A DNA stretch of 64,000 nt from Mizuhopecten yessoensis (lineage: Eukaryota). The stretch covers positions 276,334 through 340,333 of the forward strand of contig NW_018408727.1 of assembly GCF_002113885.1 (NCBI RefSeq). The letters run 5' to 3'. Made by a program: the position numbers and the translations under genes. Under the pieces are notes generated by a model that worked only from the letters and a program-made list of their open reading frames with translations, was not told the DNA's origin and ran no database searches. Positions 37,048-60,350 of this stretch are shown one piece after another (position 1 is the stretch's first letter; the number at the start of each line of letters is the position of its first letter).

Positions 37048-40000
37048 TCAGCCTGGTTCACTCTTGATAGAAGGGGAAGTTCGGTCATCGGGTTCATCGG
37101 TTTGGTCAGTTACATCATCCTGACTAGGTTCCAGTGGGGACAAAGTCACACCTTCCATGGAAATGTCGAAGCTGATGGGACGTTTGCTGACTTTGCTGGG
37201 TAGCACCACCTCTGACTCCGGGATACCCTCTGTAATGTAAGAGACATCAGTAAGCATTAGACTAGACTTAATCGCACCCATCTTTTGTAATGATAGTTCA
37301 CACACTTCCACCTTCTAAGATGTTGTTAATCCAAGCTTATCCTCTATAACAACATTTTTTTCACACCCTTCACAGGTTTGTCTCCTATTAAGGCTGAGGA
37401 AGATCAGCTTGCAGAGGGAGTGCGCATGACAGGACGGACAGGTAGCTGCTTTCTTACGACGCTCCGGTGAATATGAACATTTTGATGATTTCTGAACTAT
37501 TTTAATCATACTTTGTCACATATTTTAGCAAATGTGTATTTCTGTGGTACCTGTAACGCAGTGGACCCGATATGAACTCTATGTAAAACATATATATGGG
37601 TAGAAAACGTAAAGGTAGAAACTCGGACANAGAATAGCATGAGCTAAATTGTGACGACATCAGAATTAAATGATTTAATGTAAATATTATACAAAATATA
37701 TCTATGCACCACTTGTGCTTTTGCTTATAAACATGCCAGATTACTAATGGGGGATTGGGGCTGAAAAAATAGGAAATCATCATTCCTTATCTTGGAGTGT
37801 AATGGAGAAATCTCTAACCCTCTTCTCAGTGGTGGTTTTGATGACTAACCCACAGGTTATACAACAAAAATCACCTCTCGGGTTGGAGATTTTCTCCATC
37901 ACACCCTGAAGGTAGGAAATGATTTTATTGATTCACACCCATCTACTAGTATATTGACAATCTGACTCACACCACCTTCTGATAAGGCAGTATCTCACCC
38001 GTATCGTCCGACATATCCTACCTTCTCTTGCTATTTTCTTCACCTCCTTCCTGCGGTTGGCAAACCAGTTTAGCACCATGTGTGGAGTCACCTTCTCTCT
38101 ATCATGAAGGGAACGATGTCCTGGAAACCAACAAAGCATATATATTTATATAGAATATTACATGTAGAGTCGAGCACAAAAGTCAAGTATCCATATTAAT
38201 GTTACTCTGAAGAAAACCTAATTATGTTGTGCTGTAGAGTTGAAACGGGATCTTACATTGCACAACAAAGAAATTAAATTGGTCACATAACCAGGGTTGC
38301 CAAAGTCTCACGGTGCGAGACAAAATCTCGTGCTGAGACATCCTAGCTCGCGCATTCAAAAATGTTTTCCCCCCATCTCGCATGATGCTGTCAAAAGTCT
38401 CGCATATTGGAAAGCCCAGTGGAGGGAGATCTCCCACACTGGGCTACTAAGAAACTGGCAACCCTAACAGTCTAAGGGACATTAGTTTGACTTTGAAAAT
38501 GTTGCTCATTAACATACACCAACCAGAAAGAGTTGCTGTGAACAACCTACCCATGTTACTGACAGCCATATTACACATGTGAGAGATGGCTTCACGTTGT
38601 TCATGGGAAGGATAGGCATTCTCATTGAAGCAGGTTTCCAGCACCTCAAGGTGTTTTTCTCGGAAGGTGAAGCGTTCTCGTCGTTGATGGGGGATGAAGA
38701 TTTCCTGACCGTCTGGCAGTTTCACTTTTTGACTAATCATTGGAAGAGCACCTATAATATACAAGATAAAGAACAAAACTATTGCATACCTGACGTCTAA
38801 ATGGACAATTTCCCCATATTTGAGTAGTTTTCTCTTTGTGTCATTGTCCAACAGCATCCAATGTTTCCATTTCTTGTCAATATTTTCTACCTAACTGAAA
38901 ACCATTTCAACAGCAACAGCAGTTCAATTCTCTGTAGAAAGAGTGACATCATTTATTGACGGGAAAACAAATTAGATGTGAGCATGAGATTTCTTTCCCT
39001 CAAAAAAACCCAACATGATTATCATTTCTCCGCAATGAATCAACCTGTGAAGTATTGGAGCAAACAGGTATGTCCTAATATTTTCTGAGGAGTTCTGATT
39101 TATTTCCGATTGTCCTCCGCAGTTTTGATTACATTATACCCCCCTGCTGTTCAATCTAGATTTCTTAGTGCTAATGCCAATTTAATTTACTCACCTGATT
39201 GTGTGCTGCCTGGAGAGGATGAAGTTGGTTGAGGTGGGGAATTAGACACGGTTTTCTTGTAGGTGAGGTACCAGGCAAAGACACTCTGCATACAGTGTTG
39301 AGGAATACCACTGTATTCTCCCTGTAAAAACTGGGTAGTAGTGGCAAAAGTTTGGCCTGAAACCATACAACAAAGCAGTGTTACATATTTCTGCTTGCAC
39401 ACTAAGGTATGTTATATGATTACTAAAGTTGAACTATATTTTAATTTTAATACAATTGACTCAATGGCCTTACACCTTAAGGTAATAGGTTTGTGTCACC
39501 ATTTCTCAAAAGAATTTCTTCAAATTTTGTAGTTATATTGCGTTGGAGTAAAGAAAATGTTCTGCCTCAAAAAAAGTATAGGTTGTCAGAATTTTAAGGA
39601 TTTTAAATGGAAATTTATGTAAAAAGGAGTGAATATTGAAGAAAAAAAATGAAAGACACAATTATTTGCAAAATAATGTCAATAAAAATGATACTGCAAT
39701 AGATAAGTATTGCATTAATGTATATCAATTTAACAAATGCTGAAATTGTGTTAAATAAATTATCTATAAAGGATAAAAAATTGACATTTTATAATAAAAC
39801 CATATACACATAATAATTGCATGTAGGAGTTATCTTTCTTGAAAAACTTCCTAGTAGTGAAATAGGTAGCCGGTTTCCTGAAGTACAGAAAAAATGGACA
39901 CATGTGACTCATTGATAAAAAACCAACTGAATTAATGCCTGGATTGCTTTGAAATACTTTAATATTGAGAGAACACACTGTTCTGTCAATAATAAACATA

Positions 40001-41362
40001 CAATATTCATCAGTTTAAGATTAAACATTAGAATATGCGGACATTGTGATACTGTCTCGATCCTACATTGGATTTTCAACTAGGGATGTACTTCCTATTT
40101 CCGTTTATCGATACATGTAAAAGTTGCTCACATTTTATAGAAGTAACATGTACAAACATGCACATTAAAGGTACCAAACTTATAATTATAACCAATTACA
40201 ACGAGGACCTTCTTTTCAGTAAATACCCATCATAACTACCCATCTATAAGGATGTATTCCTCTGTGAATATGAAAGCCCTGGTACCAACTCAACCCCTAT
40301 AGTAAATAACCACTTGTCATGTTGTGGCCTTAGTAAATGTTAACACCCTGGTACTAATCCTTCCCTTCTAGTAAATAACCTAGTGTACATGTTGAGGCCC
40401 CTCCCACGTCTTGCAATGTACCTACCTGTCATCGAGGCGATCTGTCCCAGCTGTATGTTGTACTGACTCACAAACCAGCGAACCTCATCCCCAGCTTTCT
40501 GGACACCTTGCCTGTGAAAGTCAGAAACATATGGGATGTTGATAGAAAAAATGCATACATTTTATTTTGTGGTTGTCTATTATGTATTGAAAGTATTTTC
40601 AGAACAATTTATCTATATATATACATGCATCAATACCATTGTTTTCTGCTTCTTCTATTGGTTGCATAGGATAAATGATCTATTTGATTAAATAAAAATA
40701 AAATTTGGTTTAAAAGAGTTACATCATTGTTGATATTGAGGAGTGAACAGAAAAAATACCTACTTTAAAAATTCTCGTAGCTCGGTGGCAATTTCTTCAG
40801 AGATGTTTGATGCAGATGCTGAGCTGGTGTTGCTATTTTCCTCATCAATAACACAAGTAACGGTGTTGTCTATGTCGTCAACAAGGTCTATTGTTTCAGT
40901 GCGTGGTCGCTTAGGGGCCTGACGTTCAGGGAATGCTGGTTGAGAGTGTATACGGGTATTTGCTGTCATCGACACTGGGTACACTGGATTAGGGACTGGA
41001 TGAGATCGGAAGTTGGGGACGTTGTGTTGATGGGAGGCAGGGACATTATTTGCCTGTGTGGATGACAGTGAGGAATGATCACCTTGGCCTATTATCGAAC
41101 CAGGGTGACTTGTCCTGGCGATTGTGGACACTGGTGTACGAGGATGGGAGGGTTCATGGGTGTGGTTACGGACCGGCACAGCTGGCTGAGACAGGGACAC
41201 TGGCACGCTATACAGCAGTCCTAACTCATTGTCTAAACGGTCAAACGAATCAAACGCCTGAGCCACCTCCTCCTTGGTAATACCGCTGTTCCTCAGCCTC
41301 CGTATCAACTCAATCTGCTCTATGGAGAACATTTGTCGGCCACCCCCAACACGCCCTGACAT
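37048..41362 (-). CDS. HMBOX1: HNF-class homeobox protein, HMBOX1-like (6 coding exons, 442 aa)
   Basis: Exons (minus strand): 41362-40764, 40511-40426, 39356-39195, 38751-38551, 38120-38022, 37229-37048 (1329 nt, phase-consistent). N-terminal FSIEQIELIRRLRNSGITKEEV matches the HMBOX1/HNF1 N-domain. POU-like region EVRWFVSQYNIQLGQIASMTG...FAWYLTYK. Extended homeodomain RRERFTF...NENAYP...REKVTPHMVLNWFANRRKE. The symbol is family-level; orthology is unproven. Confidence 0.85.
37771..37928. mobile_element. Small foldback MITE
   Basis: aaatcat...gtgtaatggagaaatctctaaccc pairs with gggttggagattttctccatcacac...atgatttt. Confidence 0.6.
38292..38466. mobile_element. 175-bp hAT-like MITE
   Basis: TIRs cagggttgcca / tggcaacccta. 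No clear TSD. Confidence 0.6.
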
Positions 41363-43076: not shown

Positions 43077-46000
43077 ATGAATACAGAACAGTTAGATGTG
43101 ATTGAAAATTCCGTGACTGTGGAAATCAAAGACAAGACAGAAGACATCAACCAGTTTGACTCTGTGTCGAATGTGCGTTCTCAACCGGATAGGTCTAGAG
43201 ACATGCTAGCAAAACAGGCTCTAAAGGATTCAACCAACACACAACACATGGACAGTAACAAGCGAGTCGAGGGAGGAGGCACCACATACAGCCAGGAAAT
43301 GGTACCACATATGGCTCCCCCTCAAAAAATGAAAAAAGTGAAGAGGGGTATATTTATTTCCTATTCCCCTGATGCTGGGTTTGTAGAGAGAAAGTTTGTG
43401 GTAGACACAGTGCGGCAGCTGAAGGAAAACAATCTTGCAGAGGATATTTGGTTTGATAAGGATGAAAAAAATACTGACAGCCCTGTGTGGTTCTCTCTCC
43501 GCATGGAGGCAGTGGAAAAATGTCGGGCTTCCATTCTCTTCTTCTCCCCAAGTTACTTTTCATGTCCTGTGTCGATGTACGAAAGTAAAACACTTCTACA
43601 AAGACGAAGACAAGATCCACACTCAGTAGCCATATTTCCAATCATCTTTTCACCTTTAGACAACACAGATATTCCTAAAGACTATTTCTTATTAATTAAA
43701 CATGCTGTAGATTTAAGTAAGGACCATTTCAAAAAGAGTCTAGCTGAGAAAACGTCAGTTGTGATAGGAGGCATTATGGAAGAACTAGAAAAATATGCCT
43801 CCATGAACATACCTCCCACACCTGTGACTCCCCCTGACACGGAATTCACAGAGGAGTACAAAAAGAAGAAGATTTGCCAATGGGGTGCTAGTGACCTACA
43901 GGAATGGCTCTTCAATTTGGGAATAAAGGAGTTTTATCGCCAGAGTTTGGCTGAAAATATGGTGGATGGATTTCTTCTAATGTCGCTGACGGACCACGAC
44001 ATGATACAACATCTAGGAATTGACAGTCGCGTTGTCCGCAAAAAAATCATGCAGCAGATTCTTATCACCCTGGACTCGGAACACAAACAAAAGGTCAACT
44101 GGCACCTACGAGCTCGCGCTTTACGAGCCAAACCTGATGTCATCTACCTGGTGTATGATCCGGCTGATGTCAGACTTGCACAAAATATCAAAGCTGACCT
44201 CAAAAAGAAAAATCTGCAGGTAAGGAATAAACCATACAAACAGATGATATACACATACATGGACTTGTTACTTCAGCGTGTGGTTCAATTTCACAGATCA
44301 TTATTTTCAAATTTAAAAATCTATGCCGTTACAACACATACATACAAGTATACGAAAGCTTGGCACACTGAGTGGAGCTGTCTGTTACCTGTGCATGTGT
44401 CTCTCACAGCAGGGACCATATTTCATTGATCTTTTAATAAATCATACACTGTTCTCTATCCTGTTATAGCAGTGCTGGTAAAAAACTTGTAGAAGAGGTT
44501 ATCTTAATTTAGTTTCTGTAAAATAAAGTTTACTGGAAACACAAGTCTGACATCTCAATCTTAACTTGAGAAAAACGGTCAAAAGACTGCGATAAAAGTC
44601 ACAATCTCTGACTAACTATAACAGTCAACAAACTGACAAATAATAACAGTCACAGTCTGACAAACTATAACAGTCACAAATTGATGAACTATAGCAGTCG
44701 ACAAACTGACTAACTTTAACAGTTATAGACTGACAAACTATAACAGTCACAGTCTGACAAACTATAACAGTCACAGACTGACAAATTATAACAGTCACAA
44801 ACTGATGAACTATAACAGTCGACAAACTGACCAATTATAACAGTCGAGAAACTGACAAATCATAACAGTCACAGATTGACAAATTAAAACACTCACAGTC
44901 TGACAAACTATAACAGTCACAAATTGATGAACTATAACAGTCATAAATTGATGAACTATAACAGTCGACAAACTGACAAATTATAACAGTCGACAAACTG
45001 ACAAATTATAACAGGCGACAAACTGGCAAATTATAACAGTCACAAACTGTTAAACTATATCAGTCACATATACTGACAAACTATAACAGTCCCACAGATT
45101 GACAAACTGTAACAGACACAGATTGACAAACTATAACAGTCACATACTGACAAACTATAACAGGCGACAAACTGGCAAATTATAACAGTCACAAACTGTT
45201 AAACTATATCAGTCACATATACTGACAAACTATAACAGTCCCACAGATTGACAAACTGTAACAGTCACATACTGACAAACTGTAACAGTCACATACTGAC
45301 AAACTGTAACAGTCCACAGATTGACAAACTATAACAGTCACATACTGACCAACTATAACAGTCACAGATTGACAAACTGTAACAGACACAGATTGACAAA
45401 CTATAACTGTCACATACTGACAAACTATAACAGACACAGATTGACAAACTGTAATAGTCACAGATTGACAAACTATAACAGTCACAGACTAACAAACTAT
45501 AACAGTCACAGATTGACAAACTATAACAGTCCAAAGATTGACAAACTATTGGTTGAAGGATTACTCAGTGTAGTTTGGATGCCTAAATCATATGGATTGA
45601 CCGAAACTGAAGACGCCATTGTTTTATTATGTATATCATTTTACGCTAGTCACTCCTCATATCACATTTGAATCAATATAAAACAACAGGTGGCTTAGCC
45701 TATCATAGTTTGTACCACCTACTTCTATTTGTACTGTGGATTTTACAGAGATTTACAGCCTTGTCTCGTGATATATCTCTTTGTTGTAAATTTGCAAAAG
45801 GCACAAAATAAAATGATTTAAAGTTTAAAAAAATATTTTTCAACATGAAAACATAATTAGTTTTGAGAAATATGTACCTTTTGAGTTTCACAATTTGTAA
45901 ATGGGTGCAAGTTAAAATCTCATATCCTGTCATAAACAAAGTTGGCATTCAAATCAGCAGTGAAGTTTTTTGCTCAGTTTTACTGCCGAATACAGGCTGT

Positions 46001-49000
46001 TTTCCCCTTGCTTAAAAGTGTCTTATTTTCCCAAAATGACCAAAAACTGATGAATATTTTCCCAATTTGAATAAAATTAATGCTTCATTTTCCCAATTCA
46101 TAAAGAAACTGGCTGTTGTAAAATTTTGGTAACAAAAACACTGATAAGATATAAATTGCTCTGTTGGGAACTCTCCTATATCAAGTTATTAGCTCACCAA
46201 GGTCACTTAGAGCAGTGATATTTGGCCAGGTAGCATGCTGAGATGAAAAGATATCATGTTCATTCAAATGAATGACCTTGACCAAGTATAGCTTCTAGGT
46301 CACATGGGTCAAATGAGTTAAAAACTTTAAACAACTTCCTCTGAATAGTAAAGAGGCTTAGGATGATGTTAATTGACCAGCAGCATGCTTAAATGAAGAG
46401 CAATCAAGTTTGTGTAAATTAATGACCTTGACCCATTTTCAAGGTCACATGCTTCTATTGTGAATGACTTCTTGAGAATAAAAAAGAACCCTACTAGGGT
46501 GATGATGTTTGGTCATTAGCATGCATGCAAAGATGAAGGGCTATCAAGTTTGTTCAAATAAATGACCTTGACCCCATTTCTAGGTCACAGGGGTCAAATT
46601 TGTTGTTGTCAAAATTGTAGAATCCTAGTGACCATGGGCAGTCTGGATTATAGAATTACAGATATCATAAAAAGTGATCAATAAAAATATTCAGTTGATT
46701 GTAACATCCAATCCAATTTCCTGACACACACAACAGTATTTAACGACAAATCTCAGACAATCTCCTGCTGTTTCAAGGTTATATACATTTGATGGTTTCC
46801 ACTTGGGTAATTCACATGTGTGTTAGATTTTTTTCTCATATTTTCGCTCTTGCTTCACATAAAAAAAACACAGGAGAAAAGGTATCAATAAATTACTTGT
46901 GTTACAAACATGATCTTCAATAGAAAACAATTAAACACTGTAGGATAAATACACTATATTATTATGAGTTGCAAAAATGTGTCTCAATGTATTTCATATA
47001 AAACTGCTGCACACTCGTAACTACATACCTAAGTTAATTTTTACCATTTCTTTAGTACATATTTGACTATGATACTGTTATAATTATTGTTTAGTGACTA
47101 AAAATTTATGCAAATATACCATATAACTGTTATACCCATATTTTGAACCCATTATTCATGTTTCATATTTTTCTACAAAATTTTAAAAAAAGTCTTCTTC
47201 TCCAGAACTATTAATAGGGTCTGATATTTTTTTTTTCCTTACCAAGATCCCTGTCCCAATGCATTATGGTTTTTCCCTTTAACTTCCGTTTGAATAAAAC
47301 TGTAGCACAACTGGGCCAGGACAGTTCCGTTGACAAGGTAGCTCAATCGGTTAGAGCGATAGTAGAACAATCTGAAGTCAGGAGTTTGAATCCCTGTCTA
47401 GCCCCGCTGATTTCACTCCAACACTATTGTTGATTATGTTTTGTTCATTTCATCTTTATTATTTCTCATAAAAGTCCTGCAGAAATGGTTTACCAAAGCT
47501 ATAGCAATGCCGTATAAAAGAGTTTCCAATACTTAGTTTCAGTTTTTGGCAGTGGTACGGGGATCCTTAAGTCATAGCTTACAAATTGTTCATTGTTTGA
47601 CATAGATTGAAAATTCCCTAAACACATATTCAGCAAAGAAAAGAAGATATTTAATTATCAGGGCCTGGATTATTAATTAACTCATTCACCCCTGAAATTT
47701 CATAATGAACTATTCCAACTTTTGAATTGGAGGAGTTCAAATGTGTCTACAAGGGTGGATGAGTTAGTTAATCAAGGATGTACTTAAGTTTTGATACAAG
47801 GGTGATACTTTGTATTTAATATAAAGGTGACAATAAACATTTGGGTCGGAGATGTGTATATCTAATCAGTAATAGGCCTAGGTGTAATAATACATTGAGA
47901 AAGGTTACATACAGAGAGACGATTTCTATTACCCTGTGTTGAGTATATATTTACACAGAAAATATCTGTCTTCAAACATAATACACCGCTATCTCAAACG
48001 AGAGTATATGTCAGATGTGACAAGTACATGAGAGATTTACTGGGAACGGTTTAAACTTTTAATATAAGGGTTCATATTTTCTAATTTCCACATGGAGGGG
48101 ATCAACTGTGGTCCTTACGTTAAAGAACTCTTGTGTGGCCCCAAGTTGATCACAGTCCGAGTTTAATTTACCATATGTTTGTCACGAATCAGTCGTAAGA
48201 TGTGCTGAAAACATGGAAAGGTACATGCTTTTATATGAGGCCGACAACAGTGTTATTTAGATGTAAAAGTGGTATCCGTCACTTGAGTCTATCAAGCTAA
48301 TCATACCCTATGTAGGACGTCATTGTGATTGCCCATTGATACCTAAAAGGAGTGCCGGACAAAGCAATACTTTTAAGAGACTTATTTTAAGGCCTCTTGG
48401 TGTATTAGCATTAAGACTACATATTTCTTGTATCCTCAGTTTTTGACAGTTTGGTGCGAGTGAAATCTAAAGGAAAATTAACTGTTTGCTAGTTTTGCCC
48501 TTTATTGATTTCAGGTTTTAGGTTTAAGTGGTACAGCTGAAAAGTTTTTTCGGCATGACTAAATTGGCTTTGATAAATCATTTATGAAAAGAAAACCAGA
48601 TGTTGCAGGACTTTTATGAAAAATGATTAAGATGAAATGAACAAAATATAATCAACAACAGTTTTCTTATTGTAAAAACAAATCCCCCAAAAAGGGGGCG
48701 GGGGGGGGGGGGCTTAAGATCTAGATTTGAACCCTGAACTTCACGCTGCTAAACTATCTCTCTAACCAGTGGCGTAGCAAATCATTTTTCCAAGTGTATC
48801 ATCCGTGGTGCGTAGCACCGGAGGAGGGGGAGGATATGGGAGGGGGAGAAAATAGAATTCTACTAGGCCCTAGAAGCAATCTCTCGTATATATTATGGGA
48901 AATACTTTTAGTCTGATTATTTATAAGTAAAGCCTGACTTTTTGTATGAATAATGTTGAATTTTGTAGTTTTTTATTTACATAATTACCTTTCGAGATTT

Positions 49001-52000
49001 TTCAATGTGTATAGACATATTAACACTATACTTTATCGGACTAAAATTTTCAAGAAGATTTTTTTTATTCTTTCCTTTTTTCTGATTATTAAGTCATAAA
49101 AAATAAATTATTGAAAAGATATGATACAGAAAAATCATTAAAATATTTGCTTGAGCATAAAGGCATACATGTAAGCTATGCCACTGCTAACCAATTGAGC
49201 TACCTAGCCGAAGGAAATGTTGTGGTCCCAATTGTTTTACAGGTATATATCCAATCAAAAGTTAAGGGGAGGTTACTGTAGATAGGGAAAAACACAGCGC
49301 AATGGGACACTGGGCTCCTGAAAGAATATTGGAAATAATTTGATGTCTTTATGAATATGGTATGCAGATATCAAATCCTATGTATACATGAACATGTGAT
49401 ATAGCATTGATGGCAAACAAATTTAAGAACATGAGTTTTAAATCCATGTTTTAAATTTTAAAACATTTTTAAAACCTTACAAAAATTTGATGGAGAATTA
49501 ATTGATTGCCAAATGAGTTGGAAGTACACACGATTTTTTTTTTTTATAAAATAAAAAAATTATGATAGTATACATTAAACATACTTGATGTAAACATGCA
49601 TTTTGTGACTTTTTGGTTTTATTTTGTGTCCTCTGACAGAGAAATTGCCCTGTGAACATCAAACTTGCTAACAAATAATTCTATTGATATAGCGAACTAA
49701 TTTCTGAGGCCCACTGGGACTTAGTTTTATTGTATAGAATCTATGTCAAAGGAAAAGTCATTTCATTGAAATGTTTCAACCTTATGTATACAGATCAGTG
49801 ATCATAGCATGTACGTGTTAGATACCTCGATCTGTGTTAAATGCACACAACAGCTAAAGATGGAATTGCTTTCAGTTGGCATTCATAGGAAACATTTGAA
49901 TGCTACCATGAATAATGTTATTGTCAACTGAAAGACGAAAGTACTTTAATATTTAGAATAACAATGAAAAGTATTATATTTTTTCATATTTAATACAAAT
50001 ATATGATTTAATGTATAAAAAGGTCTTTTCTGTAGGGAAATTGACTTATGGTTGGTTTGTTGACCAGTGCACTGCATATTTTTAGATCTTATGTTACTGG
50101 GCTTTGTCATTCATATTTCTATGATTGCCAACTAAAGGTAGCATTATACAATGGCAATGCCATGCAAATATTTAATAAAACGGTAAAGATTTGTACTATT
50201 GTCTTTAATTGAGGCATTGGCTTGGGAAATGAAAATTATATGACAACAAAACTAGACAGATTTCGGAAAAAAGTTCAATTTTCGTTGAAGAATATGATTT
50301 CTATTCTATTTTGAAATATGTTTGTTTTTTTGTCTAACAATATGATAATAATTGCTGAATGAATGGTTGTGGGAAGGTATGATCAGGTTAACAGTGGACC
50401 TGAAGGTCTGTTAGATGATTACACCTCCAAGTGTCAAATCCACGAACTAATCTACCTTAATGCAGGTGAAACATGTGTATAATCCCGTGTTGGTAAGTGT
50501 TCACATGATCCAATAACACGAACCACAGGTCAACTCGACAGAGATTGTAATGAGTTTATTTAACAAAGAATTGTTCACTTTCTACTGGTGTCAGGTCACA
50601 CTGTTGTTCTAGCTGTGTATGCCTGCCATTTCAAGCCTAATTTATCACTTCATGTATTACATGTACGAGTATATGTCACAGATGGATGTTGACAGTTCGG
50701 ATAAATTGTTCGTGGGACAACAGTTCATTCAGATTTTCAATGGGTTTCCGATTTCGTGGATCAACAATCGAAGCTCGCTATGGGGTTATGACATGGGCCT
50801 TTCAGTCGACAATTTTCTTTTCAATGTGCTCTATCAATTTTCTAAATGGTCCTTGATAAACGTTATTGGATATCAATTTCTCAGCCGCGTGTCTTACCTG
50901 TGTAGGCGCCACATGCAGATCAAAGCCAGCCCACAGCTATGGTAGCATAATGTACAAAGTTCAGCTATCAAGCTGTGTAAAATGTAATGTTTTGAATGAC
51001 AAGAATTTTTGAGTGAAGTCAAGGGTGAATTCAGCCACAATTTTTATACTGCAGACACAGAAATTATCTAGTAAAAAATACACCATTACCAATGTATAAA
51101 TATGATGACAAAATTTAAAAGAATCCAATTCAAAAATTCTGAAAACTTCATTAAAAAGATAGGAACGTTCTATGGATATGTATGCTACCTCTTCAATATG
51201 TATTCAGTATTAATTTTCTGGTTTATTGAAACGTGAAGCCATGCCATATGGTTATTGACTACCCACACAGACACGTAATCAAATAAAAAAAGCCAGTGAT
51301 CAAAAAGTTGTCACAAAAGGCTAATTTGATTTTAAAAGATATTACTTGTAAAATGATATTACCCGTAAATAAATTTTACCTGTAAATAGATTTTATCGTT
51401 AAGTGATCTTTACTGGACATTTTCAATGAATAGGTTTATGTGTTATTATCCTAGATAACAGTGATTGAATTTCATCAGTCTGTTATTGAGGATTAATGTA
51501 ATTAGTTTCAGAGATTACCTTTTTTTTTCTTTTTTTCTTTTCCAATTTGACTATTGAAAAATAATACAAAAAAGTAACCTTGTGTTTGTGTTGTAGTAAT
51601 GGGTTTGTATTCCCAATGTTATTGGCTTTAACCCATTCACCCCTTAATTAATATTTCAACTTTACTGACTGGACAAGTCTAGTTTAAACATTTGGGGGTG
51701 AATGAGTTAACAGACTAGTGTGCATAACTCAATCAATTTTTGATGATAAAAGTAACTTTTACTCAAGGTCAAGGTCATCAGAAGATTTCCGAATTATATG
51801 TTACCAGGTACTCACAGAAACTGAAAAATGTATTTAGTATACATGAATTTGATCAATTAAGGATCTCCATACTGCAAATCTTGCAGTGATTTTATTTACT
51901 GACTAATACCAGCTTGTATACTTATGTAGCAGAACTAGACTGGGGAGATCAAAAGGTCGGCGTTGACGACCAGTTAGCTAATTAGTTGAGTGTCCGTCTA

Positions 52001-55000
52001 GAGTTTGGAGGTTCCTGGTTTTGAACCCGCATCTGGCCATGTATTTTTTCCATCTCTTGTAACAGTAGTGCCTGTGACCATGCAACCCTTGTTTCAAGCA
52101 TTGAAACCTAAATATATATACCTGAACCTGGGTTATAAATTATAAGTTATATCTTCGGAGGCTAAGACTGAAAAAAGGAGAGAGGAATGTAGCCGAACTG
52201 GATTGGGTCAGTTGTCGGCATCCAATTGGTAGAGCCTCTGTCTAGAGTTAGGAAGATCCTAGGTTCAAACCCTGGTCTGGCCGTGCTTTTTTAGGATGTT
52301 ACCAGTTTCCTGAATTGTAGATGGATAATGACAACTTAATTGTGTTATGACCTATCTTTTCCTTTATTATAGGTGTTTATTGCAAGAGTCTGTTGTGTGA
52401 GTTATCTCCCCTGTATTGTAGGTGCATGACAAGGGTCATGAGACCTGTGAAAGTAACCCATGTCCTTCTGTCATGAAAGTCCATGCAGGTCATCAGAATC
52501 TATTAGGTTCCTTAAATATCTACAGCTTTTATACGCTGTTGTCAGTATTTCACTACATGTATAAATTTAAGATACTTTTTATCACATAACTCGGAAAACT
52601 TACATTTTGACAAGTTTTAAAGCCAAAATGTAGAGGGCTTATAATCAAACGGAAACAGCCATTTTGTTGGGCCGTTCACAATTTATGATGTCACATCATT
52701 GTCCATATTATGACGTCACAATCAATTTCTGCCTGGCACAGTCAATGAAAAACACTCCAGGGTATATTACACTAGTGACACTTTTATGCAAAAGTATCAC
52801 ACAGGCGAATTCACTGGATAACAGGCCGATTATGTGATAAATAAGTTGAATCATCTTTGTACTGTAGGTGGTTCACCATGACAGCATGAAGCTAGGAAAG
52901 TCCAAGGAAGAATTCCTAAACATCAATGGTCCAGTCATGGCGACTTCGTCCCAAGTTGTTGTGCTCCTGACAGAGGCGTCCACCACCTCTCCGTTTGTCT
53001 TCCACGAGGTCTTGTTTGCAGACTGGCTCGGCAAGAAGCTTGTCACTGCCATGTTTAAAAATGTCTGGACAAACTTCAGGGCCTCACTCAAAGCGGTACT
53101 GGGTAAGTAAGACAAGAGAGATAATTTTAAAGTCAAATAATAATCATACGGAAAATATCGGTCTACGTACGACATTAATAGAGGCATACAGTATTTGTTT
53201 TCATAAAACTTACAACTGGTCAAATATAAGCCCTTCACTGGTAAAAACTGTACTTTCCCAGTGTTAATTTGCCTTACACATTTAATATTTAATATGGTTT
53301 GTTTTGTATTATTGTTCACTGTCATTTGATAAATTCCCCGTCATTGTCGAAGGCGAAAAAGGCAAAAGTTTGTTAAAAACTATGGGAATTTTTTTCTAGT
53401 ATGCAGTGTATGCAAGTATGCAATGTGCAGGGTTTACAATGAATTTAATCTACTGTATTTTTATTTGCTGAAAAGCTGGGGTTGTAGATGATAACTTCTA
53501 ACATGGATAAATACTGAAGTACTTGTATTTAGCTGTTACAGGAGTTGTTGATATATTGACAGGTGAGTGCCCGTCTGTGGACTTTGAGACAAAGATGTAC
53601 AATGAGAGTCTAGATGTATTGGAGCACCACATCAAACCCCTGAGGCGAGTTCCCGGTGTCGTCCTGGAGCAGGCCTATCTCAACAAAATGGCAGAGGGCC
53701 TCAAGCCTCTGGAGGTTCTTGGCACTGTGTCGCCAGGTATAAATTTAACAGAAAGCAAAAGAATAATTGCAGACAGATTTAAAAATCTAAAATTTGAATA
53801 TTCTTATTGACAAGTCTATTCTTAACCCTTTCATCCCTATGTAACTTTAATAAACTCTACCATGCATTGATCTGGACAAGTCCATTAGGGTCTATAGTAG
53901 TGAAAGGGTTAAATATGTTCTTACTTATCAGCATGTCATACCTGTATACAGGTGTTGATCACCAGGACAAAGTGGAGGAGTCATTACCTAATGAGTATTT
54001 GCCTTTAGCCTTGTCCATCTGTCTATATGACAACTTGATAAGACTTAATTCTTACTAATTTAATTTTTACTAATTACTCTGATACAGCACTAGAAGACCA
54101 GAAGTCATAAAACTTCATATGTGGTTACATATTGAGGAGTACGACACCAATAAACCAAATGTAGGTCACTGTGACCTATATTGTCTGCTTGACTAGTTAT
54201 ACACCATGTTTAGCACAATTTCTTATCAGAGTTGGAGTGGGGGTATATGTACTGTATGTTTTAAAAACTTTTCATATTTTTAGTAGATGGTAGTTGTTAT
54301 TCCCTGCGTAATGTTCAGCAATAAGGGGAATGGTAACAACTGGTTCACCAGTTGTCAGTATAATGTGACCGGGCGCAATGCTGTGCTTGGTGCCGTCGGC
54401 ATAGCATTTTCGTTGAGATAGCACTATGAAGTTGGCATCAGATCCGCGCTATCATAAGGAGGCAAGCACACTAACATACCCTGTCTCCTGCATACACACA
54501 CGCAAGCAGGCATACACTACATACACGGAGGCACGTCCTTAAATTACATTAGCTGTTAATAGGACGTTAAACAAAATTAAACCAAACCTCATTTGTCGTA
54601 ATAGTGTTTTTGTGTTTATAAACAGGTGGGGGCCAGTCTCAGTACCATACGGATGGCGAACCTCAGGTATTTATCAGCTACCAGTGGGACATGCAGGTGA
54701 AGGTCCTGGACATCAAACAGATGCTAGAGAACAATGGGCTTCAGTGCTGGGCAGACATAACCATGGCGAGCACCACGCAGCCGCGCGGCCACAGCAGCAA
54801 GAGTAGTCGTAGTAGCGTCACGCTGCTGGAGGTCGGGGGCGAGACGCTGCAGAGCCAGATCCAGCGAAACATGAAGGCATCGGCTGTCGTTGTGTGCTGT
54901 ATCACCCCTAAATACCTCCAGAGTGACAACTGCAAGAAAGACCTTACACTAGCCGAGACATTCAATAAACCCATCATTCCCGTCCTCCTCAGGTTCTCTC

Positions 55001-55146
55001 CCCTTGAGAGTGCCCCGGACCAGGTGCGAAAGATTATCACCAAGTTTAGTTGTGTGGACCTGAGTAACGATCGCCTTTACAAACAGCACATGGCAGTCGT
55101 CCTGGAGAGAGTAAAAAAGTATGTAGTTCCGCGTGGGTACAGCTGA
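43077..55146 (+). CDS. Cytosolic TIR-SAM-TIR-TIR protein (4 coding exons, 690 aa)
   Basis: Exons: 43077-44219, 52868-53102, 53563-53736, 54626-55146 (2073 nt, GT-AG, phase-consistent). TIR1 IFISYS...IWFDKDE...FSPSYFSCPVSMYE. SAM WGASDLQEWLFNLGI...MVDGFLLMSLT...HLGI. TIR2 IYLVYDPAD...VVVLLTEASTTSPFVFHEVLFA. TIR3 VFISYQWD...CWADI...CITPKYLQSDNCKKDLTLAETFNKPIIPV. No signal peptide or TM segment is evident. Confidence 0.88.
44608..45549. repeat. Degenerate 24-bp minisatellite (gacaaactataacagtcacagatt), about 39 copies
   Basis: Read directly; it accounts for the repetitive ORFs at 44625-45671. Confidence 0.93.
46186..46602 (+). mobile_element. Degenerate HINE-like element with tgaccttgacc/aggtcaca satellite units
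   Basis: 5' end ttattagctcacc and three units related to those at 35221-35910. Confidence 0.6.
47245..47566 (+). mobile_element. TIR element with internal tRNA-like cassette (47332-47403), copy C
   Basis: TIRs agatccctgtcccaatgc / gcagtggtacggggatcc|ttaa. A-box-like TAGCTCAATCGGTTAGAGC and B-box-like GAGTTTGAATCC. Confidence 0.8.
47677..47767. mobile_element. Tiny piggyBac-like MITE
   Basis: ttaa|ctcattcacccct ... agggtggatgag|ttag. Confidence 0.65.
48590..49318 (-). mobile_element. tRNA-cassette TIR element, copy D, interrupted by a nested transposon
   Basis: Homology to copies A and B on both sides of 48767-49186. Confidence 0.7.
48767..49186. mobile_element. 420-bp non-autonomous DNA transposon nested in copy D
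   Basis: TIRs cagtggcgtagc / gctatgccactg. Flanking duplication ctaac at 48762-48766 and 49187-49191. Confidence 0.85.
51628..51710. mobile_element. Tiny piggyBac-like MITE
   Basis: ttaa|cccattcacccc ... ggggtgaatgag|ttaa. Confidence 0.75.
51925..52304 (+). mobile_element. Miniature non-autonomous LTR retrotransposon (TRIM) with tRNA-like LTRs
   Basis: LTR1 51925-52064 (TGTAGC...TGTAACA), PBS-like gtagtgcctgtgacc, polypurine tract aaaaaaggagagaggaa, LTR2 52188-52304 (TGTAGC...TGTTACCA). Both LTRs contain A/B-box-like tRNA sequence. Confidence 0.75.
52576..52843. mobile_element. MITE-like element
   Basis: TIRs tttatcacataactcgg / ccgattatgtgataaa. Confidence 0.6.
53822..53912. mobile_element. 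Tiny piggyBac-like MITE
   Basis: ttaa|ccctttca ... tgaaaggg|ttaa. Confidence 0.75.
54285..54588 (+). mobile_element. SINE, 5'-truncated, resembling bivalve Meta-domain SINEs
   Basis: Core gttgtcagtataatgtgaccggg and tail gctgttaataggacgttaaacaaaattaaaccaaacc. A second copy lies inverted at 13771-14005. The family name is from recall. Confidence 0.75.
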
Positions 55147-55673
55147 TTGCTGGTGATATTGACATCAGACTTTCTTGTGATATGTATTTTCTCAACTTTT
55201 TTGTTTAATATAACACACTTTCTTAAAGTGTTGAACCCCAACATTGGACTTTGAACATGATAAAGTATGGAAATACCTTGTAATGCACAAGGAATATGAC
55301 CTTGTACATGTGTGATTTTTACACAATATATTTTCAGATCACTGTCCCGTGAGTAAACACAGGTAAAGAGGTTAACGTAACTAAGATATTTACACAACTA
55401 ATGAGATCTAATTTAATTTCTTTTCACAAAATTGTCACATGATTACAAATAAATGTATATGTTAACAATCTTTTGAAAATATGTCAGATAATTCCCCTTA
55501 CAAGGGTAGATCAGGTGAACCAGTTAAGGTTGAAATACTAAAAGCAATTAAAACAATAAATAACAATAAACTTGACCTATGACCTCAACGGTCGTGGAAA
55601 TTTGAGTTCGGTTTGAAAAATAATACTTTCCTCACTGTTTGAAAACTTTTAACATATAATTTCAGAAGGCATA

Positions 55674-55764
55674 TTAACCCTTTCACCACTATAGACCATA
55701 ATGGACTCATCCAGATGAATGTATGGTAGAGTCTACTCAAGCTACCTAGGGGTGAAAGGGTTAA
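55674..55764. mobile_element. Tiny piggyBac-like MITE, downstream of the TIR gene stop codon (possibly 3' UTR)
   Basis: ttaa|ccctttcacc ... ggtgaaaggg|ttaa. Confidence 0.78.
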
Positions 55765-58700
55765 AGAACAGTGCCATATTAGTAAAACTAGCTCACAGAA
55801 ATATGATTATAATGTTCCGTTGGTTATATGAAGCAAATGCTTTGATGAATGTATGTTAATGGTTTATGATGCCACACTGTCACAAAACCCTACAATGCAA
55901 TGATGTGTGATTGATCTGTACATACATGCACAGCACTGTTTGACACTGTTAATCAGAACTTATCTCTTACTTTAATGCTGTAACATGGTTGTATTATGTG
56001 AAAATGGAATGTACTTCAAGGTCATGGCTGTGATTGTCGTTTTCATATTTCCTAGTGTTTGTAATTTCGATGTGTGAATGCATTGGTATGGATGCGCCGT
56101 GTGTTCACATTGTATGGTTGGTTGCACGGTAAATTTGAATGTGTTGTGCTAGTCTGTAATGTAGGGATGGTATATAGCAATACTCTAGTTTTTTGGATGT
56201 GTTACGGGTGTGATGCGACCTTGGTGAGGAGGTGACGTTGCTAATTAGATTTATTTTTTTGCACAGGGATTGTTTTAGTGTGTACATTTAACGTTGTTAG
56301 ATCATTTAAAATTAATCTATTTTACAAAAAATAAGTTCTGTACTAAAATTGTATCGATTTACATTCTTGGCTGTGGCAATTATGATATTTTTGTTGTCAA
56401 TGGAATGGGTTTATTTTAATTTTTTTGTTATACATATTTTTTACCATATGAAGTACAGTATACCGTACACAAGTATATAAAATACCATTATCCTGCTCAA
56501 TTTCAGTGTTTCCCCAGCATACTGAATTCTGCAATATTTAGCACCAAAACAATTGAAAATTAATTGTTTTGAATGAAATAGAAGCAATTAAAAGCATATA
56601 CCAAAGTCATATATCTGGTATAAATTATCTTAGAAAATCCTGTGAGATAAACACAACAATACTTGGTCAATTACAATGTGCTACAATCATACTTATAATT
56701 ACGATTAAACAATACTAAGTGAAAAGTGTTGTGCACAACGTTATTTACAGAAATAATAAACCACTACATAAACTTGTTTGAGGAAATTTTCTGTTGATTT
56801 TATAGTTTTGTTTGGCATTTATGACTGTATCAAATCAATAAGGGACTCCCAGACAGACTTTCCTGAGCAATAAAAAATAAGCTATTTTTTCAACATTTTT
56901 TTGTAAAAAAATAATCACAGGTAAAAATATTTTTTTTTTTTTTGTAATCACTTTCAAAATAATTTATTTTCTTAGTTGCTAGCTATAAATAATATGTTAA
57001 CAGTATGTGTTTTCCAATAAAAGTGAGAAAAGAGCTAAATATGTATGTACACTTGGTACAATGGAAAGATGTCAGTCCAGACTATTTTATGTATAATAGA
57101 ATCTCATATGTCAGACCTCTTTTGTTTGTGTGTAATTTGGAATCTCAAAAAACAGACCACCTTGAATTGTGCGTAAAGTGAAACCTTGTTAGTCTGGACC
57201 CTTTAGTTTGTATGTAAAGTAGTAACTTGGATGTGAGGCAGCTGATGGTTTGTGTGTTAAATGAAACCTTATGAGTCTGATATGTTTGGTTGGTATGTGA
57301 AGTGGAGCCTTTGGATTGTGTATGAAGACGAACCTCAGAAGTCTGACTAGTTTGGTTTGTGTTATGTGGAACCTCAGAAGTCTGACCTCATTTGTTTGTG
57401 TGTAAAATTTCTTCTAACCCTGACTATTTAAGATTGTGAAAAATCTTGGAATATCAAAATTTATCACTTTAACAAATTATTCGAGGGAAAATGTGTTTTC
57501 ACTCTATTTTCAGTTGCCCCTTGCACGCTTTTCTGCGATTGTTGTTAGTGTATACTAAATCTATGGACGTTCAGGCTCTTTTACATGTATTTAAGTTTAT
57601 TTTTGTATAAGAAAAATATCCACATTTAGTTTTATAATACAAAATGAATTATTAATGAATTAATGATATAATTAGTTCATTGTTTGCTGTACATGTATTT
57701 GACAATTGTTATACAACTGGTGATCTTTAAGTTTTCTAAAAAAAAATCGTTTATAAATCCTGTGTTGCATTTACCAATGCGATTCTATTTTTTGTGGCAG
57801 CAGTTTGCAAGATCTTCCTTAAAATAGAAATATTCTAATGACTGAATAAAATTGCATCATGAATTTATACTTGTAGTACCAATTCAGTCTTTAGACCAAT
57901 ACCATATCAGAAAGAAATTAATGCAAAACATATCAGGGCTAGCAGAGCAGTAGATAAGCCCCCCTCCCCATTTGGCAGAGATATTTAATATTGATGAAAC
58001 TGTTTTAGTAAATAATATCAAAGTTTTAATTGATATACAAAGTATGTGTAAAACACATTGTTTGTGTATAAAGTAAAACTTTGATATTAAGTACATCTAA
58101 ACTTATGAATCTTATTGAAGGTAATATAGTAAATATATATTTCTTTTGTATAAAACTCTGTATTATTGTAAATGGGAAAGCAAATCTAAGTCGAAAGAAA
58201 AGCTGAACAGATAGGAACTCTCCTTCGTTGGAGATACAAAACAGAGCAATGTGACTTTCTACCTTAAGCAACATAGCGATACAATTTCTTATTTTGGCTT
58301 GCTTGAGTGCATTGTTAAATATTGAACCAGTAGATATGTATTTGTGATATTTTATCAAAAAGAAGGAGGCTATAGTCATAAAAAAAAATTGTGTTTATAC
58401 TCAAGTTGTGTGATCATATCATCTTCTTGTAATTTACAGAGATCTTGTAACAAATTCAAAAAGTAAATCACAAACTTAGGAAATATTGACGTTACAGCTC
58501 TCAGTGAAGCACAACAAAAACGGAATAACTTTATGTACTTTGTTTTAATTATTGTAGCATTTGAGATTGATCACAGAATCTGAGTTGTGTTGAGCATGAT
58601 AATGATTTTATGGCTACAGGCCCAGAGCCAAGAATATGTTTTATTAATCAATAATGTGTTGTCAATTTCATGATGTCTTCCACTGTTTTTGTGATAATAT

Positions 58701-59199: not shown

Positions 59200-60350
59200 C
59201 ATGTGTGTATGAAATTCTTCAATAAATAGGGGATTCCCATTTTATTGTGTGCAAGTGTATTAAACCTTAATTTCAATAGGGAATTGCCTTTGTACTGTGT
59301 ACACGTATAGGAAACCTTCCAATAGAAAGAGGGTTCCCTTTTAGGGGAATGCTCTTGTATTGTGTACAATAATCAAATAGGAGATTCCCCTTGTATTGTT
59401 TACACATATGTGAAACTTTCCAATAAATGGGGGATTCCCCTTGTATTGTTTATGCATATGTGAAACTTTCCAATAAATGGGGGATTCCCCTTGTATGTTG
59501 TACTAATATGTGAAATTTTCCAATAAATTGAGGGGATTCCCCTTGTATTTCGTACACATATGTGAAACTTTCCAATAAATTGGGGATTTCCCTTGTATTT
59601 CGTACACATATGTGAAATTTTCCAATAAATGGGGGGGATTCCCCTTGTATTTCGTACACATATGTGAAACTTTCCAATAAATGGGGGATTCCCCTTGTAT
59701 TTCGTACACATATGTAAAACTTTCCAATAAAAGGGGAATCCCCTTGTATTTCGTACACATATGTGAAACTTTCCAATAAATGGGGGCTCCCCTTGTATTT
59801 TGTACACATATGTGAAACTTTCCAATAGATATGGGATTGCCCTTGTATTGTGTACACATAAGTGAAACTTTCCAAGAAATACCGGATTCCCCTTGTATTG
59901 TGTATATTAAATATAGGGGATTCATGTAAAAGCTATATTTATATATATATAGTTTATAGTGATACTTCTGCTATTGTCTATACCAGTATGAAATATACAA
60001 GGTATATAGGGAATTCCCAATGTATTGTCTACGTGCCATTTTGAATAAATATGGAATTCGACTCATATTGTCTGCACCTGTAAGGAATATAGAAGATAAA
60101 TATTGTGTGAAACGTGAGATAGATAGGGAATTCCCCTCCAATTGTATGTCTTAACGTCTGTGAATTATCCAAGATAAATAGGGAGATTCCCATACGTCTT
60201 TTTACATGTGTGCGAAACGTGAAATAGACAGGGAATTCCACATGTATTGTCTATACGTCTGTGAATTATCCAAGATAAATAGGGGGATTCCCATACTTTG
60301 TTTACGTGTGTGTGAAACGTGAAATAATTTCGACAGGGAATTCTCCATCC
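59200..60350. repeat. 50-bp tandem repeat containing GGGGATTCCCC / GGGAATTCCC motifs
   Basis: Unit gtacacatatgtgaaactttccaataaatgggggattccccttgtatttc. The homogeneous core is 59380-59900, with degenerate flanks. Confidence 0.93.

What the first reader, a model, noticed from the sequence alone, without database searches (positions are those of the whole stretch)
43077..55146. Cytosolic TIR-SAM-TIR-TIR protein: candidate self-assembling NADase / immune effector with a rearranged SARM1-like layout
Seen in sequence: four exons splice into 690 aa with three TIR-fold domains and one SAM domain, and no LRR, TM, death or ARM domain. The ORF track shows only fragments, and TIR2 is split by an 8.6-kb intron. 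Established knowledge: in SARM1, SAM-driven oligomerisation activates TIR NAD+ hydrolysis, which needs a Glu in helix alphaC; plant and bacterial enzymatic TIRs share this Glu. TIR1 (SPSYFSCPVSMYE) and TIR2 (TEASTTSPFVFHE) have Glu at that position. The FISY...W.D...S.xC..EL..A....KPIIPV pattern is closer to TIR_2/bacterial-type enzymatic TIRs than to TLR/MyD88 adaptor TIRs. Inference: this is an invertebrate NAD-consuming or signal-producing module lacking SARM1's autoinhibitory ARM domain. Surveys of bivalve TIR proteins list many cytosolic architectures, so this one may already be catalogued, but I know of no functional characterisation.
Basis: partly seen in the sequence, partly recalled or inferred. 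Interest (0 to 1): 0.8.

Follow-up and report, generated by a model that had tools for sequence, protein, structure and literature searches.

The report
Conserved SARM1-like TIR-SAM-TIR-TIR gene
This is a real, expressed scallop gene for a cytosolic protein with three TIR domains and one SARM1-type SAM domain; it belongs to an ancient, single-copy and very conserved invertebrate family that databases already list but nobody has tested, and it may be a second animal NAD-cleaving TIR enzyme besides SARM1.

Summary
Four GT-AG exons (43077-44219, 52868-53102, 53563-53736, 54626-55146) encode 690 residues. Each exon matches the RefSeq protein of Mizuhopecten yessoensis LOC110462547 exactly. Two junctions are seen in RNA reads and contigs. 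Pfam finds TIR_2 in TIR1 and TIR3, and one SAM. The split middle domain folds as a TIR (Z 15.0 to the SARM1 TIR).

The SAM is specifically SARM1-like (E 4e-15 to SARM1 SAM1; the next family scores 2e-8). There is no ARM, death, LRR or membrane segment.

This is not a bivalve novelty. It is a single-copy ortholog group, 52-74% identical across molluscs, annelids, nemerteans, brachiopods, bryozoans, hemichordates, echinoderms and amphioxus. No vertebrate, tunicate, arthropod or nematode member was found.

The helix-C acidic position is an invariant Glu in TIR1 (E169) and TIR2 (E428), but an invariant Asp in TIR3 (D623).

The NADase reading is plausible and untested. TLR2 also has Glu at the position aligned to E169, and fold matches do not separate enzymes from adaptors.

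The architecture is already catalogued: an amphioxus TIR-SAM cDNA in 2008, and surveys of conserved invertebrate TIR proteins. I found no functional study.

The parts
43077..44219 (+). Exon 1 (residues 1-381): disordered N-terminus, TIR1, SAM, and the first strand and helix of TIR2
   Evidence: The ORF starts at an ATG with an in-frame stop upstream. The donor is GTAAGG at 44220. The translation equals P0001 1-381.
43341..43811 (+). TIR1 (residues 89-245); invariant Glu E169 at 43581-43583
   Evidence: Pfam TIR_2 scores 35.9 bits against a cut-off of 28. pLDDT is 87-97. VIA gives Z 14.5 to the RPP1 TIR over residues 88-246. E169 is invariant in 26 of 26 sequences.
43854..44084 (+). SAM domain (residues 260-336), SARM1 SAM1-like
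   Evidence: Pfam SAM_2 scores 31.8 bits and SAM_1 28.4 bits. The profile hits SARM1 SAM1 in the PDB at E 4.1e-15 and C. elegans TIR-1 at 1.2e-12; the next family, liprin, scores 2.1e-8.
44124..44219 (+). TIR2, first part (residues 350-381: strand A and helix A)
   Evidence: The AlphaFold models place strand 352-359 and helix 362-377 here.
44220..52867 (+). Intron 1 (8648 bases), which splits TIR2; it holds a 24/149-base tandem array at 44608-45549
   Evidence: GT..AG ends. Tandem Repeats Finder. Many database ORF calls end just past the same point in other species.
52868..53102 (+). Exon 2 (residues 382-459 plus one base): TIR2 strand B, BB loop, strand C, helix C and strand D; invariant Glu E428 at 53006-53008
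   Evidence: The translation equals P0001 382-459. An RNA joint lies at its 3' end. S422, F424 and E428 are invariant.
53563..53736 (+). Exon 3 (residues 460-518): the end of TIR2 plus a very conserved tail (residues 485-515, 53637-53729)
   Evidence: RNA joints lie on both sides. The translation equals P0001 461-517. The tail is 78% identical on average to 25 species.
54626..55146 (+). Exon 4 (residues 518-690 and the stop): linker and TIR3; invariant Asp D623 at 54940-54942; disordered Ser/Arg-rich insert (residues 562-589) at 54757-54840
   Evidence: Pfam TIR_2 scores 62 bits. VIA gives Z 17.0, rmsd 2.2 A over 128 residues, to the SARM1 TIR. In the HMM alignment the Lys-Asp of TIR3 lies on the Lys-Glu(642) of SARM1.
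55147..56385 (+). 3' untranslated region, interrupted by a dispersed repeat at about 55674-55840
   Evidence: RNA contigs of two runs continue to 56385/56388. One contig lacks 87 bases (55673-55759).

Best explanation
The locus is the scallop ortholog of an ancient bilaterian family related to SARM1, with the layout TIR1 - SAM - TIR2 - TIR3.

Shown:
- It is a real, spliced, expressed, single-copy gene for a soluble 690-residue protein with three TIR folds.
- Its SAM domain has SARM1 SAM1 as its nearest solved relative.

Inferred mechanism:
- The SAM domain brings copies together, as in SARM1.
- This lets the TIR domains form the head-to-tail contacts that TIR enzymes need.
- TIR2, the best conserved module, has an invariant Ser-x-Phe-x-x-x-Glu in helix C and an invariant BB loop. 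It then cleaves NAD+ (or NADP+) to nicotinamide plus ADP-ribose or a cyclic ADP-ribose-type product.
- TIR1 also keeps the Glu. Its nearest sequence matches are TLR2 and MyD88, so it may be a second catalytic site or the docking TIR that receives an upstream signal.
- TIR3 has invariant Asp and Asn where TIR2 has Glu and Phe, and carries a Ser/Arg-rich disordered insert. It is most likely a non-catalytic partner or regulator of TIR2.
- With no ARM domain, control would come from TIR-TIR contacts, the conserved tail after TIR2, or phosphorylation, rather than from NMN/NAD sensing.

Whether the output serves immunity, stress signalling or cell death is open.
For: Gene model and expression.

Domains.

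SARM1 kinship of the SAM.

Acidic position:
- E169, E428 and D623 each lie five residues into helix C of their domain in the model (helices start at 164, 423 and 618).
- E169 and E428 are invariant in 26 of 26 sequences. D623 is present in 25 of 26; the exception is a frame-shifted isoform.
- The profile-profile alignment puts E428 on D623. The HMM alignment puts D623 on SARM1 E642.

Conservation and copy number:
- TIR2 and its tail are 73-78% identical on average from scallop to echinoderms and amphioxus.
- The gene is single-copy in this genome.
- The family is confined to eight invertebrate phyla.

Background: SARM1 needs E642, SAM-driven oligomerisation and ARM autoinhibition; prokaryotic and plant TIR enzymes need the same Glu; plant TIRs without it act as paired sensors (PMC7282519).
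Against: - No activity was measured, and no paper testing this family was found.
- The Glu is necessary but not sufficient. TLR2, not known as an NADase, has Glu aligned to E169. TLR4 and MyD88 TIRs lack activity (PMC7282519).
- The Trp four residues before the Glu in SARM1 is Phe in TIR2, Val in TIR1 and Asn in TIR3.
- The mapping of E428 onto SARM1 E642 is indirect (E-values 0.014 and weaker). It was not checked by 3-D superposition, because model coordinates cannot be read here.
- Structural Z-scores tie SARM1 with non-enzymatic TIRs.
- There is one SAM, not the tandem pair that builds the SARM1 octamer.
Confidence: 0.45

Rival explanations
1. It is a non-enzymatic adaptor or scaffold. The three TIRs bind the TIR domains of Toll-like receptors, MyD88 or other cytosolic TIR proteins, and the SAM multimerises the platform. 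This tunes Toll/NF-kB-type signalling, much as other novel amphioxus TIR adaptors are reported (from my recollection) to act as negative regulators.
For: The best sequence matches of TIR1 among solved structures are the TLR2 (E 0.0023) and MyD88 (E 0.0035) TIRs. Fold matches include Hydra TRR-2, IL-1RAcP and MyD88 at Z values tied with SARM1. Reviews treat the conserved invertebrate TIR proteins as presumed adaptors (PMC6321704, PMC10279657).
Against: The Glu is invariant in two domains, and TIR2 is extremely conserved, including its BB loop, across about eight phyla. That is more than adaptors usually show. All three domains fit TIR_2 better than the TLR-type model. The SAM is specifically of the SARM1 type.
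Confidence: 0.3
2. It is a catalytic TIR protein with a different chemistry or substrate from SARM1. Possibilities are base exchange, production of a 2'/3'-cyclic ADP-ribose isomer as a second messenger, or nucleic-acid cleavage to 2',3'-cyclic nucleotides as described for plant TIRs. It would work as a signal generator rather than an NAD-depleting executioner.
For: The residue evidence is the same as for the main explanation. The protein is expressed in some unstimulated RNA samples at moderate depth, which fits a regulated signal producer better than a lethal NAD consumer. There are weak matches to ThsB-type bacterial TIR models.
Against: Nothing here separates the possible products. The ThsB matches are far below any family threshold (E 0.001-0.03).
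Confidence: 0.15
3. The gene model is an artefact: separate genes or a pseudogene were stitched together by prediction.
For: Many database entries stop after the exon-1 part.
Against: RNA contigs of 2992 and 3601 bases run from far upstream of exon 2 through exons 3 and 4 into the 3'UTR. Transcript-length contigs of other species (2.5-3.6 kb) encode uninterrupted 673-674-residue orthologs with no gap at the junctions. All frames are open and the splice sites are canonical.
Confidence: 0.01

Closest known systems
SARM1 / C. elegans TIR-1 / Drosophila Ect4 (ARM-SAM-SAM-TIR NAD+ hydrolases)
   Same: The SAM domain is nearest to SARM1 SAM1 (E 4e-15). The TIRs are of the TIR_2 type. The models of TIR2 and TIR3 cover the whole SARM1 TIR (561-700) at Z 15.0 and 17.0. 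Glu sits at the helix-C position in TIR1 and TIR2. The protein is cytosolic.
   Different: There are no ARM repeats, so no NMN/NAD allosteric site. There is one SAM instead of two and three TIRs instead of one, one of them N-terminal to the SAM. TIR3 has Asp for Glu. Sequence identity of the TIRs to SARM1 is only 11-18%. It is a separate ortholog group, absent from the vertebrate, arthropod and nematode proteins returned here.
Conserved invertebrate cytosolic TIR-domain proteins ('ecTIR-DC' classes of Gerdol et al. 2017) and the amphioxus TIR-SAM gene model (Zhang et al. 2008, PMC2575513)
   Same: It is a cytosolic TIR-domain protein conserved among invertebrate phyla and lacking in vertebrates. 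Database names such as 'Bf-TIR-SAM-like protein' tie the family to the amphioxus cDNA.
   Different: I could not read the 2017 survey, so the class number is unknown. Those works catalogue architectures and give no function, no residue analysis and no link of the SAM to SARM1.
Plant sensor/helper TIR pairs and bacterial multi-TIR assemblies (SPARTA TIR-APAZ, Thoeris ThsB)
   Same: Active sites form only when TIRs pack together. Catalytic TIRs work alongside TIRs that have lost the Glu. SPARTA TIRs are among the top structural matches (Z 16.7 and 14.4).
   Different: Here the catalytic-type and degenerate TIRs lie in one polypeptide. No NB-ARC, Argonaute or SIR2 partner is attached. Sequence matches to ThsB models are weak (E 0.001-0.03).

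Membership tests
TIR domain superfamily (Pfam TIR_2, PF13676) | Sequence match above the curated cut-off (28 bits) | tested here: met
   TIR1 scores 35.9 bits and TIR3 62 bits. TIR2 alone scores 21.8 bits, below the cut-off, though the full protein shows three stretches and 106.9 bits.
TIR domain superfamily (Pfam TIR_2, PF13676) | Five-stranded parallel alpha/beta fold matching solved TIR structures, including the split middle domain | tested here: met
   The TIR2 model (pLDDT 80.5) matches the SARM1 TIR with Foldseek E 3.8e-5 and VIA Z 15.0 (127 residues, rmsd 3.3 A). TIR3 reaches Z 17.0 and TIR1 Z 14.5.
SARM1 orthologs | N-terminal autoinhibitory ARM repeats | tested here: not met
   Residues 1-88 are disordered (pLDDT 30-44) and poorly conserved, and there is no Pfam hit.
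SARM1 orthologs | Two tandem SAM domains followed by a single C-terminal TIR | tested here: not met
   There is one SAM (residues 260-336) flanked by TIR1 and followed by TIR2 and TIR3.
SARM1 orthologs | SAM domain of the SARM1 type | tested here: met
   The profile scores E 4.1e-15 against SARM1 SAM1, with a 1e-5 conditional E-value for SAM2 and 2.1e-8 for the next family.
Enzymatic TIR NAD+ hydrolases (functional class) | Glu in helix C at the position of SARM1 E642 | tested here: inconclusive
   E169 and E428 are invariant and sit at the same helix-C offset as D623. D623 aligns to E642 and E428 aligns to D623, but only in weak alignments. TIR3 itself has Asp. No 3-D superposition was possible.
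Enzymatic TIR NAD+ hydrolases (functional class) | Aromatic residue (Trp in SARM1, from the alignment) four residues before the Glu | tested here: inconclusive
   TIR2 has an invariant Phe (F424), TIR1 Val (V165) and TIR3 Asn (N619).
Enzymatic TIR NAD+ hydrolases (functional class) | Glu-dependent cleavage of NAD+ on self-association | not testable with these tools
   This needs recombinant protein and an NAD+ assay.
Conserved invertebrate TIR-DC proteins (Gerdol 2017) | Cytosolic, conserved across invertebrate phyla, no vertebrate homolog | tested here: met
   Named members come from Mollusca, Annelida, Nemertea, Brachiopoda, Bryozoa, Hemichordata, Echinodermata and Cephalochordata. There is no vertebrate among the 59 proteins matching TIR2 or the 120 best matching exon 1. 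The word-based search can miss distant kin.

The most novel reading that the evidence does not exclude
Bilaterians ancestrally had two SAM-TIR NAD+-cleaving enzymes. Besides SARM1 there is this ARM-less family, lost in vertebrates, tunicates and ecdysozoans. In it a catalytic TIR2 and a degenerate TIR3 in the same chain form a built-in composite active site. That site is switched by SAM clustering and by phosphorylation of the TIR3 loop, and it makes a nucleotide second messenger rather than simply draining NAD+.
Probability: 0.25. Interest if true: 0.8.

Novelty: new variant of a known kind. Interest (0 to 1): 0.55.

Why it matters
SARM1 is regarded as the only animal TIR protein with enzymatic activity (PMC7282519). 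It is a drug target in axon degeneration. A second SAM-TIR family kept nearly unchanged for over half a billion years in marine invertebrates would be informative in three ways. It would show how TIR enzymes can be controlled without an ARM sensor. It would give a natural example of catalytic and degenerate TIRs fused in one chain. It would also help to date when animals acquired and lost TIR-based nucleotide signalling. For shellfish immunology it singles out one of the many uncharacterised cytosolic TIR proteins as a conserved core component rather than a lineage-specific expansion. If the protein proves to be a plain adaptor, the finding is a well-annotated but ordinary gene.

Tried and rejected
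- Single-sequence and profile searches of TIR2 against PDB sequences found no TIR. The fold had to be shown by modelling.
- Profile-profile alignments between the three TIRs are weak (E 0.014, 0.046, 0.17). The domains are therefore old duplicates or of separate origin, and only the TIR2-TIR3 alignment spans the helix-C motif.
- I looked for the scallop's own SARM1 with the SAM profile, to obtain a SARM1 sequence by reference. Only the gene itself came back, so there is no direct TIR2-to-SARM1 profile alignment.
- PADLOC and NCBIfam scans gave only sub-threshold ThsB, SAVED-TIR and FxsC hits. They are not used as evidence of membership.
- Literature searches for a functional study, for the 2017 survey, and for named amphioxus adaptors found nothing on this family. 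I dropped a recalled claim about SARM1 SAM interface residues because I could not confirm it.
- The idea of a short TIR1-SAM isoform, prompted by the many 370-480-residue database entries, was set aside. These are most simply ORF calls on genomic contigs that stop after the conserved intron.
The joined protein was studied only as the public entry P0001, returned by the word search, and each exon was checked against it separately.
- The large representative search was not run, because it returns no taxonomy.
Full report
**What is in the sequence**

The window is low-GC eukaryotic DNA. It lies on contig C5400 of a 988-Mb assembly. The long ORF at 43077 runs past a GTAAGG donor at 44220. Three further coding pieces follow, each behind a pyrimidine-rich AG acceptor.

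The four exons are 43077-44219, 52868-53102, 53563-53736 and 54626-55146. They add up to 690 codons. All introns are GT..AG, both split codons read GGT, and an in-frame stop lies upstream of the ATG.

A word search with the exon-1 ORF returned a 690-residue RefSeq protein, P0001: 'uncharacterized protein LOC110462547 isoform X1', Mizuhopecten yessoensis. Each exon translated by itself matches it exactly, at residues 1-381, 382-459, 461-517 and 519-690.

Every analysis of the whole protein used the public entry P0001.

**RNA evidence**

Nineteen public runs hold exon 1. I laid two RNA-contig runs and two raw-read runs on 52000-57000.
- The joints 53102/53563 and 53736/54626 appear in one contig of each contig run and in 6 and 7 raw reads of run X20. 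Run X23 has no reads on the exons.
- The contigs (2992 and 3601 bases) extend about 1504-1511 bases upstream of exon 2, the size of exon 1 plus a 5'UTR. They extend downstream to about 56385, giving a 1.2-kb 3'UTR.
- Indirect support comes from orthologs. Transcript-sized contigs (2.5-3.6 kb) of other species encode uninterrupted 673-674-residue proteins with no gap at that point.

**Domains**

Pfam finds three TIR_2 stretches and one SAM in P0001 and in four distant orthologs. Scanned separately:

| Domain | TIR_2 score (cut-off 28) | TLR-type TIR model |
|---|---|---|
| TIR1 | 35.9 bits | 17.3 bits |
| TIR2 | 21.8 bits | none |
| TIR3 | 62 bits | 14.9 bits |

The middle domain therefore needed a fold test.
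- An AlphaFold model of residues 345-525, built from 26 orthologs, has pLDDT 80.5 and a strand-helix pattern of the TIR type.
- Foldseek's best matches are the SARM1 TIR (E 3.8e-5), SPARTA TIR-APAZ, TLR1 and MyD88.
- VIA-align gives Z 15.0 over 127 residues, covering SARM1 561-700.

In the full-length model (pLDDT 77.7, pTM 0.61):
- TIR3 matches the SARM1 TIR at Z 17.0 (rmsd 2.2 A) and TIR1 matches the RPP1 TIR at Z 14.5.
- Residues 1-88, the linkers and a 28-residue insert in TIR3 (562-589) are disordered.

No ARM, LRR, death or membrane segment is present.

These Z-scores tie enzymatic and non-enzymatic TIRs. They prove the fold, not the subtype.

**Link to SARM1**

The SAM profile hits SARM1 SAM1 at E 4.1e-15 and C. 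elegans TIR-1 at 1.2e-12. The next family, liprin, scores 2.1e-8. This is the strongest evidence that the family is kin to SARM1 rather than a chance domain combination. It is not a SARM1 ortholog: ARM repeats and the second SAM are missing, and there are three TIRs.

**The acidic residue**

In a 26-species alignment, E169 and E428 are invariant. D623 is invariant apart from one frame-shifted isoform. In the model all three sit five residues into helix C of their domain.

An HMM alignment places the Lys-Asp of TIR3 on the Lys-Glu642 of SARM1. A profile-profile alignment places E428 on D623. Both are weak, so the equivalence is inferred and not proven.

At the position four residues upstream, where SARM1 has Trp, TIR2 has an invariant Phe, TIR1 has Val and TIR3 has Asn.

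TLR2 also shows Glu aligned to E169. TLR4 and MyD88 TIRs lack NADase activity (PMC7282519). The Glu is therefore necessary but not sufficient.

**Conservation and distribution**

Identity to the scallop protein is 52-74% over the full length. Mean identity by region is as follows:

| Region | Mean identity to scallop |
|---|---|
| SAM | 77% |
| TIR2 | 73% |
| 31-residue tail after TIR2 | 78% |
| TIR1 | 62% |
| TIR3 | 63-70% |
| N-terminus | 20% |

A search restricted to TIR2 and its tail returned only 59 proteins, all of this family. Named members come from molluscs, annelids, a nemertean, a brachiopod, a bryozoan, hemichordates, echinoderms and amphioxus. None comes from vertebrates, tunicates, arthropods, nematodes or cnidarians. 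The search relies on shared words and can miss distant kin.

In the scallop genome the gene is single-copy. Other TIR hits are at most 40% identical over parts of TIR3, apart from two 37-residue stretches at 54%. One 98% copy of exon 4 sits on a 1.9-kb contig, probably a haplotig.

The neighbours are profilin, an intronless HSP70 and an HNF1-type homeobox gene lying head-to-head. This is not an immune gene cluster.

**Interpretation**

The reading 'SARM1-like layout, candidate NADase' is reasonable but unproven.

My best account is as follows. SAM-mediated clustering activates a catalytic TIR2. TIR3 acts as a degenerate partner, by analogy with plant TIRs that lack the Glu and work with a catalytic helper (PMC7282519). 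TIR1 is either a second catalytic domain or the docking domain.

The main rival is a non-enzymatic adaptor. Reviews assume this role for the conserved invertebrate TIR proteins (PMC6321704, PMC10279657).

**What is known already**

An amphioxus TIR-SAM gene model with cDNA support was reported in 2008 (PMC2575513). Database names ('Bf-TIR-SAM-like') derive from it.

Conserved invertebrate TIR-domain classes lacking vertebrate homologs were defined by Gerdol et al. 2017. That paper is cited in PMC6321704 and PMC8662601 but is not held in the library, so I could not assign a class.

I found no functional or structural study of this family. I rate it a new variant of a known kind: catalogued, uncharacterised, and of moderate interest mainly because of its extreme conservation and its specific kinship to SARM1.

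Noticed in passing
window 59375-59904 and 60104-60326: There are tandem arrays of 50/101-base units whose consensus contains GGGGATTCCCC / GGGAATTCCC, which are NF-kB-like cores. They lie about 3 kb beyond the end of the 3'UTR. This is the subject of the scan's separate note s1-569607.
   Followed up: partly
window 53670-54003, 54338-54671, 55674-55840: Short stretches in introns 2 and 3 and in the 3'UTR have enormous depth in RNA contigs and reads, most of which run on into unrelated sequence. Opposite-strand joints link 53823 with 55673. They look like copies of a highly transcribed dispersed repeat in both orientations. One RNA contig lacks 87 bases at 55673-55759.
   Followed up: no
window 44608-45549: A 24-base unit (38 copies, also periodic at 149 bases) forms a minisatellite inside the 8.6-kb intron. 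It creates the repetitive 'CQSVTVIV'-type ORFs on the minus strand.
   Followed up: no
window 62255-64000: A 53-base tandem repeat with at least 34 copies runs off the end of the window.
   Followed up: no
window 8153-10051 (+), 311-745 (-), 38447-41362 (-): The neighbours are an intronless HSP70 ORF (632 aa, Pfam E 1e-254) in a GC-rich patch, a profilin ORF, and exons of an HNF1-type homeobox gene. The N-terminal exon of the HNF1-type gene lies head-to-head with the TIR-SAM gene, with 1.7 kb between the start codons. A shared promoter region is possible.
   Followed up: partly
window 53637-53729 (residues 485-515) and 54757-54840 (residues 562-589): Two conserved features are unexplained. One is a near-invariant peptide after TIR2 that is modelled with low confidence. 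The other is a disordered Ser/Arg-rich insert in TIR3 with invariant Arg/Ser positions, which suggests a kinase site.
   Followed up: no
G000:C79248:1197-1724 (locus L002): A 1.9-kb contig carries a 98% identical copy of exon 4. It is most likely an unplaced allelic contig rather than a second gene.
   Followed up: no
database hits P0004-P0006, P0010, P0012, P0013, P0020 and others: Dozens of 370-480-residue entries from many species stop just after the exon-1 part. This shows that the intron inside TIR2 is conserved. They could also hide a real TIR1-SAM short isoform.
   Followed up: no
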